DNA of 64,000 bases from Vitrella brassicaformis CCMP3155 (GCA_001179505.1 CDMY01000859.1:180046-244045), one strand, 5' to 3'. Positions 32,199 to 36,099 are shown, counted from the first letter of the stretch. Notes: generated by a model not told the origin, from the sequence alone. Numbers and translations: made by a program.

Positions 32199-32782
32199 AT
32201 GTTCCCAGCAGCGTCCCTTGTTGCCTTTGCAGTGGCACTTCCTGCCGTTGCCGCCGCTTTCGTGGCTCCGGCACACCCATCTCCCTCTTTCATCGTTACG
32301 GCAGCAACGCCCTCCCTGCATCTGAGAAGAAATCGCCCCGCGGCATCAGTGCTGGCAATGAGTAGTGATGGTGATGGCAGCGGCAGCCAGGGCGATGTGT
32401 GCAGGGGTGCTTACCTGAGGGAGATGGCCTGGTTTGCCGGTGCTGTGGCGCTCATCCAGACACTGAGGACAAACGCCGAGGCAGTATCTGGAGGTGGGCA
32501 TGATTGCAGGTCGTGACTTGGTGTGTGATATGTGTGTTGAGTGTTCCTCTCTTGCCTGTCAGGTGGGAAGGATTATTCTGGACTGAACCTGTCGAACCAA
32601 GACCTCAGTGGTACCTAGAGAAGCAGGCAGACACTGCCATATAGAGCGGGTCCATTGTGCGTGTGCAGGTCAGTCGTTCATTGGCAAGGACTTCTCTCAG
32701 GCCATCGCTGAGGGCACCAACTTCAAGGGCTCTGGTCGGCAAGCACACACAGAGAGATGCACACACGTGATGACGCTGCTGC

Positions 32783-32813
<31 letters not shown>

Positions 32814-33206
32814 GACACGTCAGATCTGAGCGGCACGCGCTTCTACAAGGCCAACCTCAAAGGAGCTGACCTCAGTGGTACGACGGAAGAAGAGGCACAA
32901 CGAAACAGAAACTGCTGCACAAATCGTGAACGAGCATTCTCTCCTTTCGTCCGTCCAGGTGCCAAGATGCGCGCCGCGTCTTTCGAAGCGGCGCAGCTGG
33001 ACGGCGTCAGTCTCAAGAATGCCGACGCCAGCTCGGCCTACTTCTCCGGCAGCTCCCTGGACAAGGTCGAGTCGATCGAAAACAGCGACTTCAGCGAGGC
33101 GCTGATGCGACAAGGGGTGAACCGTATGCTGTGCGAGCGGGAGGATGCGAAGGGCGTGAACCCGTCTACTGGGGTGGACACGAGGGAGTCCCTCAACTGC
33201 CCGTGA
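32199..33206 (+). CDS. Thylakoid-lumen pentapeptide-repeat protein (TL17/TL20.3-like), nucleus-encoded and plastid-targeted
   Basis: Signal peptide ending AAA|FVAP, S/A/R-rich transit peptide and a lumenal signal ending AEA. A(D/N)LxG pentapeptide repeats (DLSGTRFYKANLKGADLSG) and the characteristic C-terminus LCEREDAKGVNPSTGVDTRESLNCP*. Confidence 0.9.
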
Positions 33207-33531: not shown

Positions 33532-34105
33532 TCACGCCCTCTTCCATCTCTCGGCCGGCTCCCACTCCCGCATCTCGTTGAAGAAGCCCGGCACGCGGTT
33601 CCTCTTGCCGGCACCGGCCACCTCCCCTCTGTAGCTCTGTGGCACTCGAAAGCCCTCCTTCGGCCGCCTGACCTTCGCCTTAGCCCGCACAGCAGATGAT
33701 TGGACAGCTGGGGCAGGGGATGGGCCGGCAGCCCGCCATGGCGAGAGCATCATGGGGGCAAGGGCAGGCTTCTTGCTGCCAGGTGGGGGGGTCGATGGCT
33801 GGGGCTTTGGCTTTGCTCTTGCCGCCGACCGTTGGGTGTTGACCTGGTCGGCTGAGGCGCGTATGCGGTCATTCAGCCTCCTGAGGTCTTCGCGGGACGG
33901 AAGGCCTGCATAAGGAACGCAGACCGACGCTTTTGTGTGGGGCTTCTTCTGCATGTGTGGTGCGTGAGTGCCCGCTATTTACCATGCACTTTTGTGCTCA
34001 AATGCTCCACATCAGTGCGGAAGTAGAAAGACACGGGGGCGAAGGAGGTCAGGCCGGCAGTCGGATCAGCACCCAAAGCAGACGGCAGCTTCGCTGACAC
34101 GCACA

Positions 34106-34138
<33 letters not shown>

Positions 34139-35172
34139 TGCAGATGAGGGATGGACACACACAAGGATGTGTCCTGCCTGTGTGGTGTGGGTATTGACTC
34201 CCACCTGCATTCATTTGGTCCCTGTGGACGTTGAGGAACTCAAAGGCAGCTCGGGGCGTGATCAACGACTGGCTGGCAGGACGATAGCTGCAGCAGCGAG
34301 GACAACAGCCATGAGTGGCAGCACCAGTGCCATCCGTCCGTCTGTCTGCGTGCCCACCCATCGTATCTCTGATGGCAGCCGCGACACAGATTGACCTGCA
34401 GTGCCACAACCAGCCCGAAGATGATCTCACCATCCATCCGCCCCAGTCGTCTATAACCATTTCTCACCTTGATTGCGCCGACCAGCCGCCGTGCAGTGCC
34501 CAGCTCATCGCCGCAGTCATAGCACCGCCGCGTGAAGTACCGGTGGATCATATCACGCAGACGAGAGGCTGCAAGAAGGCGTGCACACAACGGACGGCAA
34601 CATTGAATGTGCGCACGAGCCCCACGTGGATGGCCTCCGTAGTACTGTACCTGACAGCTGGTTTTCGGATCGCACACCCTGCGGCAGGGGCACTTGCCGT
34701 GGCAGCTGTCGGTACTTCTCCACCCATATCTCACGCGTATCTGCACACGCTCAAGAACGGCACAATGACCCTCACCCACCGCTTTGTGCCTTTGCTGCCT
34801 ACGTGTGAGTTGGGCGAGGCATTTCTCGACTCTGAAGAGGCGCAGTAGCTCATGCGGGGCCAGGTGGGCCATCACTGAACGCATCACCTCGTCCGGCAAA
34901 GCACCGAACGTGAAGCCATCTCCACGAGCTGAAGCTGAGGACACAGCCGCATTCCCACTTGTTGCGTCCTCCTCCAGGTCGATGGTGACGACTTGTCGCT
35001 GTCTTGGCCTCCGTGACGCCGCAGACTCCTCAGAGATGACTGAGGGACAGCCGGTCATTTGATTCGGTGCAGCAGGCGGTGTACGACGGGAGGCTACTTG
35101 CGGCTGCCGACGGCGGCTGGGCGTCACGTGGGGCATCTCATCCACAATCAAGCACTCGTCATCGATGTCCAT
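33532..35172 (-). CDS. F-box protein with C4 zinc finger and XPA/Rad14-like domain
   Basis: F-box FGALPDEVMRSVMAHLAPHELLRLFRVEKCLAQL...IW. Spliced downstream exons give RCYDCGDE...VNLCRGCHQRY, LITPRAAFEFLNVHRDQM and FYFRTDVEHLSTKVHG|LPSREDLRRL. All junctions are in frame. Confidence 0.7.
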
Positions 35173-36099
35173 GGGCGACTTTCGGTCTGTCAAGAATTCT
35201 TTCCCGGGGAGATTCGAGACAAACCCCGGAATGCTTCCAGTCCGCTCGTCAGATCAGATTCTGTTTCTGGCTGGAATGATGCTAAGCTCGCAGGCGAGTT
35301 GCTCCCTGAAAGAGGAAGAGAATGAAGAGAAGAGGGAGGAAAGGCAAACGACAATGCATTCGCCTCTGGGTTCCTACTCTCGTGCAGGTCGTCTTGAAAA
35401 GAAAGGAGAGGATGTGTGTGCGCGTGATAGACGACTCGCCTCCCCCGAGGCCGACACGTTCATACGGGCGGTGCATGACTCGCTTCCTACCCCTTGACGG
35501 GCCCACACATCAGGCGCAGCGATGGACGGACGCATCGATGGGCTCACACAGGTCGGTAGTAGTGAATGCGCAGAATGAGTTGGGGCTGTGCATTCAGTCA
35601 TCGGATGTCACATCTACAGGTTCATGGGGACGGCGAAGGCCTCGCCAGAATGAGACAAATGCATTCCATCCAACGGCATCCGTCGTGGTACGCTCAGGAC
35701 AGCCCTGCACGCCATGTGATGACTTCTGTGATTGCATGTGTATCCGCTACCCTTTTGCAGGGTGCCGACAGGCAGTGCGTGAGGACTGATGGTTCTGTCC
35801 CGTGTCGGCCGATGTCAACAAGTTAACACACAAGAAGCACAATGGACGAGTAAGCAACCATGACACACACAAGCCGAACACACAGACACCTACCCCTACC
35901 CCTCTCTCTTTGTCTGTGTCAGGAGAGGTGCGGCCCATGCGAATGGTGTTCACAAGCCAGTCATCATCCCCCGAATGTGTTGCTGAGGAGGCCTGCTCAT
36001 GTATGGCTTTTGGTCGGTGTGACCCTATCGACTGAGCCAACTTGGGTACAAACGCATGGACACATGACACTTGCCAGCCAGTATTCGCTTCCTTCCATC

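What the first reader, a model, noticed from the sequence alone, without database searches (positions are those of the whole stretch)
33880..34900. F-box protein fused to an XPA/Rad14-like damaged-DNA-binding module
Seen after splicing: F-box, then CxxC-x16-CxxC, then LITPRAAFEFLNVHRDQM, FYFRTDVEHLSTKVHG and a charged helix. Known: the XPA minimal DNA-binding domain has the same order (CEEC...CDNC, LITKTEAKQEYLLKDCDL, LYLKLQIVKRSLEVWG, charged helix). Inference: an SCF substrate receptor that targets ubiquitylation to DNA junctions or lesions, or an XPA-fold repurposed for protein binding in a phototroph exposed to high light.
Basis: partly seen in the sequence, partly recalled or inferred. 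Interest (0 to 1): 0.7.

Follow-up and report, generated by a model that had tools for sequence, protein, structure and literature searches.

The report
F-box protein with XPA-type DNA-binding domain
The alga Vitrella brassicaformis expresses a spliced gene that joins a ubiquitin-ligase docking motif (F-box) to a diverged copy of the zinc-finger DNA-binding domain of the repair protein XPA/Rad14; the same little-studied design occurs in a few other protists, so this is a divergent member of an existing but uncharacterised family.

Summary
A seven-exon gene lies on the minus strand (CDS 35172-33532, 388 aa). Spliced transcript contigs from three studies show five introns as joints and imply the sixth. 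A stored MMETSP protein (P0001) is identical to the spliced product. The organism is Vitrella brassicaformis, and the public entry says only "F-box domain-containing protein".

The protein has four parts:
- an F-box at residues 90-134;
- an alpha/beta module followed by a long helix;
- a basic, proline-rich tail.

P0001 alone gives no Pfam XPA hit. An exhaustive HMMER search found three relatives with the same layout: a Vitrella paralogue, Digyalum, and an uncultured marine eukaryote that passes Pfam thresholds for F-box and XPA_C. A five-sequence profile, which also includes P0009 from the profile word search, matches only XPA (E 1e-8), Rad14 and the SLC30A9 XPA-like domain in the PDB. A fold search of 48,161 chains put those same three proteins on top (Z 5-7). 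The DNA-stacking aromatic residue is kept (F245). Most of XPA's basic DNA contacts are not.

An SCF receptor aimed at DNA junctions or lesions is plausible but untested. The F-box/XPA clade was already mentioned in passing by Kose et al. 2023.

The parts
33532..35172 (-). Whole coding region: 7 exons, 388 codons plus stop (TGA 33534-33532). It encodes P0001, the Vitrella brassicaformis F-box/XPA-like protein.
   Evidence: Manual GT..AG model. Identical to the database protein P0001. Joints seen.
35173..35263 (-). 5' UTR. Transcript contigs reach 35263. An in-frame stop lies at 35256-35254, and there is no ATG before 35172.
   Evidence: X1 piece 34803-35263; sequence read.
34803..35172 (-). Exon 1: residues 1-123 plus 1 nt. 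Holds the acidic/low-complexity N-terminus and the first two thirds of the F-box.
34709..34905 (-). F-box, residues 90-134 (LPDEVMRSVMAHLAPHELLRLFRVEK...IWVEKY). It is interrupted by intron 1 (34741-34802).
   Evidence: Pfam F-box-like E 4.4e-4, 20.4 bits (curated cut-off 24.3), covering model positions 2-46 of 47. FBXL5 F-box is the best PDB hit for P0001 alone. Relatives pass the Pfam thresholds.
34651..34740 (-). Exon 2: end of the F-box and the linker.
34468..34568 (-). Exon 3: helix before the finger and the first CxxC (C169 at 34524-34522, C172 at 34515-34513).
34375..34524 (-). C4 zinc finger, CYDC-x18-CRGC (C169, C172, C191, C194). It is interrupted by intron 3 (34396-34467).
   Evidence: The four Cys are invariant in five relatives. 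They align with the zinc Cys of XPA (C105/108/126/129) and of Rad14.
34358..34395 (-). Exon 4: the second CxxC.
33983..34274 (-). XPA_C-like alpha/beta subdomain, residues about 205-265 (LITPRAAFEFLNVHRDQM ... SFAPVSFYFRTDVEHLSTKVHG). Covers exons 5 and 6, with intron 5 (34094-34204) between them.
   Evidence: Profile alignments to XPA 137-195 and Rad14 225-283. AlphaFold2 pLDDT 75-90 here. VIA-align Z 5-7 to XPA-type chains.
34041..34043 (-). Codon of Phe245, the equivalent of the DNA-stacking hairpin aromatic (XPA Trp175, Rad14 Phe262).
   Evidence: Alignment columns. The role of the residue is from PMC7708039 and PMC9739396.
33829..33903 (-). Long C-terminal helix, residues 266-290 (SREDLRRLNDRIRASADQ...), the counterpart of XPA helix alpha5.
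   Evidence: Helix 120-145 of model m97325af01776. Aligned to XPA 197-231.
33535..33828 (-). Basic, proline-rich tail, residues 291-388 (net charge +15). It contains GKRNRVPGFF. No domain was found.
34094..34204 (-). Intron 5, which carries a (CA)n/(GA)n microsatellite.
   Evidence: repeat skipped by the aligner; the contig pieces on either side fit the model.
33906..33982 (-). Intron 6 (77 nt, GT..AG).
   Evidence: joint 33904/33982, cut +1.

Best explanation
This is a real, expressed Vitrella brassicaformis gene for a 388-residue protein. Its N-terminal F-box is followed, in one reading frame, by a diverged XPA/Rad14-type DNA-binding domain: a C4 zinc finger, an alpha/beta subdomain with a beta-hairpin, and a long helix. 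A basic, disordered tail ends the protein.

It belongs to a small, uncharacterised eukaryotic family with the same collinear layout. It is not the cell's XPA orthologue.

Most likely mechanism (inferred, not shown):
- The F-box docks on Skp1-Cul1-Rbx1.
- The XPA-type module, helped by the basic tail, places that ligase on DNA that is kinked, branched or at a single-strand/duplex junction, or on RPA-coated repair or replication intermediates.
- Proteins sitting there are then ubiquitylated.
This would be an SCF counterpart of the damage-binding CRL4-DDB2 receptor or of the F-box helicase FBH1.

My confidence by layer: gene and splicing about 0.97; F-box plus XPA-type domain homology about 0.85; DNA-structure-directed ubiquitylation about 0.4.
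For: Gene and splicing: P0001 equals the spliced model, and the joints appear in contigs of three studies.

F-box:
- Pfam E 4.4e-4 over the whole model.
- Relatives pass the Pfam cut-offs.

XPA-type domain:
- Exhaustive phmmer links P0001 to P0005, P0006 and P0007 (E 1e-6, 4e-6 and 1.8e-5 in 1.8 billion proteins).
- P0007 and P0009 hit Pfam XPA_C (29.3 bits against a cut-off of 25; E 1.4e-11).
- hhalign of the Vitrella/Digyalum group against the P0007/P0009 group gives 98.6 %, E 8e-16.
- Profiles against the PDB give XPA 1.4e-8, Rad14 3.9e-8 and SLC30A9 6e-4, and nothing else at E <= 0.01.
- A profile of only the Pfam-negative members still ranks Rad14 first (E 0.004).
- The fold search over 48,161 chains puts 2enk (Z 7.0), XPA 6ro4_G (6.2) and 6j44_A (6.1), and Rad14 (5.3, 5.1) on top, then MerR/excisionase folds. 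Foldseek's best hit is 2enk.

Features bearing on DNA binding:
- The four Cys are invariant.
- Phe245 aligns with XPA Trp175 and Rad14 Phe262, and the F262A mutant of Rad14 loses DNA binding (PMC7708039).
- Thr210 corresponds to XPA Thr140.
- The tail has net charge +15.
- The Vitrella paralogue adds a DEK_C-like DNA/chromatin domain (E 2e-4).

The fusion is old: three introns share position and phase between the two Vitrella paralogues.
Against: - P0001 alone has no Pfam XPA_N or XPA_C hit at E <= 10, and its F-box is below the Pfam gathering score.
- The structure model is of middling quality (mean pLDDT 64; the zinc finger is below 50).
- Foldseek gave no E <= 0.001, and Z 5-7 is in the range the tool warns can be common.
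- The five basic residues that contact the DNA backbone in XPA (K141, K151, K179, R207, R211; PMC9739396) correspond to P211, H221, S249, I279 and about A283 in P0001. Only neighbouring arginines are present.
- XPA's zinc finger is also a protein (RPA70) interface, so the module may bind protein.
- No Skp1 binding, DNA binding, localisation or UV response has been tested.
Confidence: 0.55

Rival explanations
1. The XPA fold is re-used as a protein-recognition (substrate-binding) module. The protein would still be an SCF receptor, but its C-terminal domain would grip a protein such as RPA or another repair or chromatin factor, not DNA.
For: XPA's five basic backbone contacts are not kept at their positions in P0001 (alignments; residue list from PMC9739396). 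The XPA zinc-finger region is a known RPA70 interface (established knowledge). F-box proteins usually carry a protein-binding C-terminal domain. The related SLC30A9 domain has no demonstrated DNA role that I could cite.
Against: The hairpin aromatic (F245) and Thr210 are conserved. Arginines lie next to the lost lysine positions. The tail is very basic. The paralogue carries a DEK_C-like domain.
Confidence: 0.3
2. This protein is Vitrella's working XPA: the NER scaffold itself, with an F-box added for its own turnover or regulation.
For: The whole minimal DNA-binding domain is present and collinear. XPA sequences of the SAR group are described as divergent (PMC10810185).
Against: Profile alignments cover only XPA 104-207. 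Nothing matches XPA's N-terminal RPA32/ERCC1-binding part or its C-terminal TFIIH-binding part. The N-terminus is replaced by an F-box. There are two paralogues in Vitrella, but Kose et al. list one XPA for it and say they discarded the F-box clade.
Confidence: 0.07
3. The resemblance is chance. The module would be a generic zinc ribbon followed by helices, unrelated to XPA (for example an ArfGAP-like finger).
For: The single sequence gives only weak hits: ArfGAP-like AGFG1 at E 0.6 and rubredoxin-like Pfam families at E 0.1-0.5.
Against: The family profile hits only XPA, Rad14 and SLC30A9. hhalign gives 98.6 %. The fold search is topped by the same proteins. ArfGAP never appears with the profile.
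Confidence: 0.05

Closest known systems
XPA (human) / Rad14 (yeast) minimal DNA-binding domain (Pfam XPA_N + XPA_C; PDB 1XPA, 6J44, 6LAE, 6RO4, 5A39, 5G32)
   Same: It has the C4 finger with the same Cys pattern; the x18 spacing matches Rad14. The order of beta-strand, two helices, beta-hairpin, helix and long helix is the same. LIT(K/P) starts the alpha/beta part. The aromatic at the hairpin tip is kept (F245 = W175/F262). Profile E values are 1e-8, and VIA Z is 5-6.
   Different: It has no XPA N-terminal (RPA32, ERCC1) or C-terminal (TFIIH) interaction regions; an F-box sits upstream instead. XPA's basic DNA contacts K141/K151/K179/R207/R211 are not kept in place. The hairpin loop is two residues longer. 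P0001 alone is below Pfam detection.
F-box + XPA_C proteins of other protists (P0007, P0009 with its upstream ORF in L006, Digyalum P0005, Vitrella paralogue P0006); the 'F-box clade' set aside in the XPA phylogeny of Kose et al. 2023 (PMC10810185)
   Same: They share the collinear F-box, linker, CxxC-x18-CxxC and XPA_C-like module. The invariant columns are Y, C-D-C, G, K, C-R-C, Y, Q, S, Y and D. Three introns are shared with the Vitrella paralogue.
   Different: P0001 is 26-31 % identical to them. It has a long basic tail and lacks the DEK_C-like head of its paralogue. P0007 and P0009 are much closer to XPA (for example LVTKTEAK, RWGSRE).
XPA-like domain of SLC30A9/ZnT9 (PDB 2ENK)
   Same: It is the best structural match (Foldseek E 0.026, prob 1.0; VIA Z 7.0 over 94 residues) and a profile hit (E 6e-4). 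It shows the XPA_C fold embedded in a non-repair protein.
   Different: SLC30A9 has no zinc finger in front of the domain and no F-box. It is fused to a cation-efflux transporter.
DNA-directed cullin-ligase receptors: DDB2 (CRL4), FBH1 (F-box + UvrD helicase), KDM2A/B (CxxC + F-box). Named from established knowledge, not tested here.
   Same: In concept, a substrate receptor carries its own DNA-recognising domain, so that ubiquitylation happens on chromatin or at damage.
   Different: The DNA-binding folds are unrelated (WD40, helicase, CxxC). No functional data exist for the protein here.
Plant F-box protein SKIP31. From my memory only: I believe it is annotated with an XPA-like C-terminal domain.
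   Same: It may be the same architecture. It is reported to target JAZ proteins (Varshney 2023, cited in PMC12647438).
   Different: This is not verified. No held paper links SKIP31 to XPA, the primary paper is not held, and I had no SKIP31 sequence from a tool.

Membership tests
F-box (Pfam PF12937/PF00646) | An approximately 45-residue motif that matches the Pfam model at its curated threshold. | tested here: inconclusive
   P0001 scores 20.4 bits, E 4.4e-4, against a cut-off of 24.3, but covers model positions 2-46 of 47. The LPDE...ELLR...V.K...L...W pattern is like Skp2/FBXL5.
F-box (Pfam PF12937/PF00646) | Homologues aligned over the same segment pass the threshold. | tested here: met
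   P0007 scores F-box-like 29.1 and F-box 27.8 bits. The L006 upstream ORF scores F-box 21.6 against a cut-off of 20.5. Profile A1 hits the FBXO3, FBXL5, Skp2 and FBXW7 F-boxes weakly.
F-box (Pfam PF12937/PF00646) | Binds Skp1 and assembles into an SCF ligase. | not testable with these tools
   Needs pull-down, two-hybrid or complex modelling.
XPA/Rad14-type DNA-binding domain | C4 zinc finger, CxxC-x17/18-CxxC, at the start of the domain. | tested here: met
   C169, C172, C191 and C194 are present. They are invariant in five relatives and align with the zinc Cys of XPA and Rad14.
XPA/Rad14-type DNA-binding domain | Match of the protein itself to Pfam XPA_N/XPA_C. | tested here: not met
   No hit at E <= 10 for P0001 or for P0001:150-290.
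XPA/Rad14-type DNA-binding domain | Profile-level homology to XPA/Rad14 over the whole domain. | tested here: met
   Profile A4 against the PDB gives XPA 1.4e-8 and Rad14 3.9e-8, covering XPA 105-207. Profile A5, without Pfam-positive members, gives Rad14 0.004. hhalign gives 98.6 % to XPA_C-positive relatives.
XPA/Rad14-type DNA-binding domain | The alpha/beta fold of the C-terminal subdomain. | tested here: met
   The five top VIA matches of 48,161 chains are XPA-type (Z 7.0-5.1). Foldseek's top hit is 2enk (E 0.026). Caveat: model pLDDT is 64 and the Z values are middling.
XPA/Rad14-type DNA-binding domain | Conserved aromatic residue at the beta-hairpin tip (W175/F262). | tested here: met
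   F245 lies in the aligned column. It is Phe in four of five relatives and Leu in Digyalum.
XPA/Rad14-type DNA-binding domain | Basic residues that contact the DNA backbone (XPA K141, K151, K179, R207, R211). | tested here: not met
   Reading the alignments, these correspond to P211, H221, S249, I279 and about A283. Arginines 212, 222, 278 and 280 lie next to them. The closer relatives P0007 and P0009 keep several.
XPA/Rad14-type DNA-binding domain | Binds damaged or junction DNA. | not testable with these tools
   Needs EMSA or fluorescence anisotropy.
XPA orthologue (NER scaffold) | N-terminal RPA32- and ERCC1-binding motifs and a C-terminal TFIIH-binding region. | tested here: not met
   Profile alignments stop at XPA 104-207. 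The N-terminus is an acidic tract plus the F-box. A GDGF at residues 84-87 is not conserved in relatives.
F-box/XPA_C family (uncharacterised) | Collinear F-box, C4 finger and XPA_C-like module, with significant mutual similarity. | tested here: met
   Supported. Intron positions and phases are shared with the Vitrella paralogue.

The most novel reading that the evidence does not exclude
The F-box/XPA_C proteins are a conserved class of SCF receptors that read DNA structure (junctions, kinks, bulky lesions) directly through an XPA-type domain and ubiquitylate whatever is stalled there. They would be an SCF analogue of CRL4-DDB2 that has gone unnoticed because it was filtered out of XPA phylogenies as an outgroup.
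Probability: 0.3. Interest if true: 0.7.

Novelty: new member of a known kind. Interest (0 to 1): 0.42.

Why it matters
XPA is the central scaffold of nucleotide excision repair, and its DNA-binding domain is rarely seen outside XPA itself.

A family that couples this domain to an F-box would link recognition of DNA structure directly to SCF ubiquitylation. That link is known for CRL4-DDB2 but not for SCF with an XPA fold.

The Vitrella protein is annotated only as "F-box domain-containing protein", so its repair-type domain is invisible to standard annotation.

The family has no experimental characterisation that I could find. It is small enough (a domain of about 140 residues) for simple binding assays.

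For the chromerid/apicomplexan lineage, it adds to a set of F-box fusions to nucleic-acid machinery that this scan has noted in the same genome.

Tried and rejected
- **Pfam on single exons:** the pieces are too short. Only a weak F-box signal appeared.
- **Word-index protein search with the read-through ORF and with residues 85-300:** it found only the protein itself.
- **ESM Atlas feature searches:** only generic F-box clusters came back. The Atlas fold search gave only low TM-scores (SLC30A9 0.35, listed first; highest 0.40), then excisionase/MerR-like folds.
- **AlphaFold2 without an alignment:** pLDDT was 43, so the model is unusable.
- **Metagenome scans:** the five-sequence alignment had no stretch conserved enough to scan with. 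The two-sequence alignment found only identical copies of P0007, so the alignment stayed at five sequences.
- **ArfGAP-like finger (2olm, E 0.6):** rejected, because the profile never hits ArfGAP.
- **P0004 and P0008 from the exhaustive search:** multi-stretch, Cys-rich repeat proteins with incoherent Pfam output. I treated them as composition artefacts.
- **P0003, the 822-aa UniRef entry:** its first 496 residues are not encoded anywhere in the window. I did not use it as the gene model.
- **SKIP31 link:** no paper links it to XPA, and the primary paper is not held.
- **RNA fold of intron 5:** unremarkable (z -1.1).
- **Whether Vitrella has a separate canonical XPA:** this could not be settled. 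Kose Table S1 lists XPA = 1 without an accession.

Full report
**What is there**

The flagged stretch lies inside a gene on the minus strand. Reading that strand gives seven exons with GT..AG introns:
- 35172-34803
- 34740-34651
- 34568-34468
- 34395-34358
- 34287-34205
- 34093-33983
- 33905-33532

Together they make 1167 nt, or 388 codons. I searched the exons by reference and searched with the 317-residue read-through ORF window:34240-35193:-.

That search returned a stored protein, P0001, from an MMETSP transcript marked "type:complete". Its 388 residues are exactly the product of my splice model. All later work used P0001 by its id.

The cluster look-up names the organism as Vitrella brassicaformis CCMP3155. 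The GenBank model CEM35661.1 / UniRef A0A0G4GXF3 is called "F-box domain-containing protein" and starts 38 residues later.

**Expression and splicing**

I laid Logan contigs of four runs from three studies on window:33400-35400.
- They are spliced contigs. Five joints fall exactly at my introns, with CT..AC ends on the + strand.
- The sixth intron (34094-34204) holds a CA/GA microsatellite. It lies between contig pieces that fit the model to the base.
- No alternative joint was reported.
- The contigs reach 35263. In that 5' leader there is an in-frame stop (35256-35254) and no ATG before 35172, so the N-terminus is complete (read).

**Anatomy of the protein**

| Residues | Feature |
|---|---|
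| 1-85 | Acidic, low-complexity stretch |
| 90-134 | F-box: Pfam F-box-like E 4.4e-4, 20.4 bits, below the curated 24.3 but covering 45 of 47 model positions |
| 135-160 | Linker |
| 169-194 | C169-x2-C172-x18-C191-x2-C194 |
| 208-265 | Holds LITPRAAFEFLNVHRDQM and SFAPVSFYFRTDVEHLSTKVHG |
| 266-290 | Predicted long helix |
| 291-388 | Proline-rich tail of net charge +15 |

The spacing is 18, as in Rad14.

**Is the C-terminal module XPA-like?**

The single sequence says no. It gives no Pfam XPA_N or XPA_C hit at E <= 10, and nothing but noise against PDB sequences. The word-index search found no relatives.

Because the protein was still open, I used the exhaustive HMMER search with residues 140-300. 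It gave three credible relatives in 1.8 billion proteins.
- **P0006** (E 4e-6) is a second Vitrella gene, CEM19797.1.
- **P0005** (E 1e-6) is a transcript of Digyalum oweni, which, from my own knowledge, is another myzozoan.
- **P0007** (E 1.8e-5) comes from an uncultured marine/lagoon eukaryote with a compact genome.

All three have an F-box, then CxDC-x18-CRxC, then the same downstream motifs. P0007 passes Pfam's curated thresholds for both F-box-like (29.1 bits) and XPA_C (29.3 bits against 25).

A further relative, P0009, hits XPA_C at E 1.4e-11. The ORF that abuts it upstream in its contig carries an F-box above threshold.

Four more tests bear on the question:
1. Profile-profile comparison of the three Pfam-negative members (Vitrella x2, Digyalum) with the two Pfam-positive ones gives 98.6 % probability, E 8e-16.
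2. A five-sequence profile of the domain, searched against all PDB sequences, returns at E <= 0.01 only human XPA (1.4e-8), yeast Rad14 (3.9e-8) and the XPA-like domain of SLC30A9 (6e-4). The alignment runs from the first zinc Cys to the start of the long helix, XPA 105-207.
3. Leaving out the Pfam-positive members still puts Rad14 first (E 0.004) and XPA next.
4. AlphaFold2 with the five-sequence alignment gave a middling model: mean pLDDT 64, the finger below 50, the alpha/beta part 75-90.
   - Its secondary-structure order (strand, helix, helix, strand, strand, helix, long helix) is that given for XPA in PMC9739396.
   - Foldseek's best PDB match is the SLC30A9 domain 2enk (E 0.026, prob 1.0), with XPA chains following; none reaches E <= 0.001.
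   - VIA-align does not depend on Foldseek. It aligned the model to 48,161 representative chains and ranked 2enk (Z 7.0), XPA 6ro4_G (6.2), XPA 6j44_A (6.1) and two Rad14 entries (5.3, 5.1) on top. MerR/excisionase-type DNA-binding folds followed.

Each Z value is modest. The agreement of sequence profile and fold ranking on the same three proteins is what persuades me. I put the homology at about 0.85.

**What is kept and what is lost**

Kept:
- The four zinc Cys are invariant.
- The family's Phe (F245 in P0001) sits in the column of XPA Trp175 and Rad14 Phe262. This is the hairpin aromatic that packs on the DNA junction. Its mutation in Rad14 abolishes DNA binding (PMC7708039; PMC9739396).
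- Thr210 matches XPA Thr140.

Lost:
- The five basic residues listed as DNA-backbone contacts in XPA (K141, K151, K179, R207, R211) correspond to P211, H221, S249, I279 and about A283. Arginines lie only next to them (my reading).
- Nothing matches XPA outside residues 104-207, so the RPA32, ERCC1 and TFIIH interaction regions are absent.

This protein is therefore not an XPA orthologue. It is an F-box protein that carries the XPA-type DNA-binding domain.

**Age of the fusion**

I mapped the paralogue P0006 on its genomic locus (L007). It has ten exons. Three introns share both position and phase with the window gene:
- codon H124/G147, phase 1, at the end of the F-box;
- codon G200/T266, phase 2, just after the finger;
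- codon A228/R294, phase 1, inside the XPA_C-like part.

The whole architecture therefore predates the duplication and is not a gene-model artefact. The paralogue also has an N-terminal DEK_C-like segment (E 2e-4, below threshold). DEK_C is a domain associated with DNA and chromatin.

**Mechanism**

What is shown: an expressed protein with an F-box and an XPA-type domain.

What is inferred: the F-box binds Skp1, and the XPA-type module with the basic tail brings SCF to branched, kinked or damaged DNA, or to RPA-covered intermediates, where neighbouring proteins are ubiquitylated.

The main rival is that the fold now binds a protein substrate. The lost basic contacts support this. Two further rivals are that this is the organism's real XPA and that the resemblance is chance; I give both low weight, for the reasons in the report sections.

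**Comparison with the literature**

Kose et al. 2023 (PMC10810185) mention that their XPA homology search pulled in a clade of proteins with F-box domains and some XPA_N/XPA_C hits. They discarded it as an outgroup together with the ZNT9 (SLC30A9) clade.

Their Table S1 lists one XPA and one XPC for Vitrella without accessions. I cannot tell whether a separate canonical XPA exists.

I found no functional study of the F-box/XPA family.

From memory, I suspect the plant F-box protein SKIP31 has this architecture. I could not verify it.

**Verdict**

The function is plausible but untested.

The gene is a divergent new member of a family that is already visible in databases but uncharacterised. 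It is moderately interesting.

Earlier notes of this scan report other F-box fusions to nucleic-acid machinery in the same genome. I did not test those.

Noticed in passing
window 35059-35172 (minus strand): The public GenBank model CEM35661.1 (P0002, 350 aa) starts at Met39 of the transcript-supported ORF. The transcript contigs reach 35263, with an in-frame stop at 35256-35254 and the first ATG at 35172. The annotated protein therefore appears to be 38 residues short at its N-terminus.
   Followed up: partly
P0003 (UniRef A0A7S1K3Q9, 822 aa) versus window: A second public entry shares its last 326 residues exactly with this protein. Its different 496-residue Q/P/G-rich N-terminus is not encoded anywhere in the 64-kb window, and the junction is not at a canonical acceptor. 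It is probably a chimeric transcript assembly, or else comes from another locus.
   Followed up: partly
window 32757-33206 (+ strand): A convergent ORF with pentapeptide repeats (Pfam PF00805, E 7e-13) lies under the roughly 1-kb 3' extension of the F-box gene's transcript contig. Either the 3' UTRs of the two convergent genes overlap, or the assemblies merged them.
   Followed up: partly
window 33577-33606 (minus strand; residues 364-373) and P0006 residues about 380-390: The basic tails of the two Vitrella paralogues share a short motif: GKRNRVPGFF here and GKKRVLPKSF in the paralogue. It could be a nuclear-localisation or docking motif. It does not fit a canonical PIP box.
   Followed up: no
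window 34100-34147: A (CA)n/(GA)n microsatellite lies inside intron 5. Similar CA runs occur elsewhere nearby, for example around 33480 and 32780.
   Followed up: no
L006:2154-2950: In an uncultured eukaryote contig, the F-box ORF and the XPA_C ORF (P0009) were called as two abutting genes. They overlap by one base, so this is probably one gene split by a frameshift or a small intron in the gene call.
   Followed up: partly
L007:3001-5065 (Vitrella CDMY01000520.1): The paralogue CEM19797.1 (449 aa, 10 exons) has an N-terminal DEK_C-like segment (E 2e-4) and a lysine-rich insertion of about 70 residues between the F-box and the zinc finger.
   Followed up: partly
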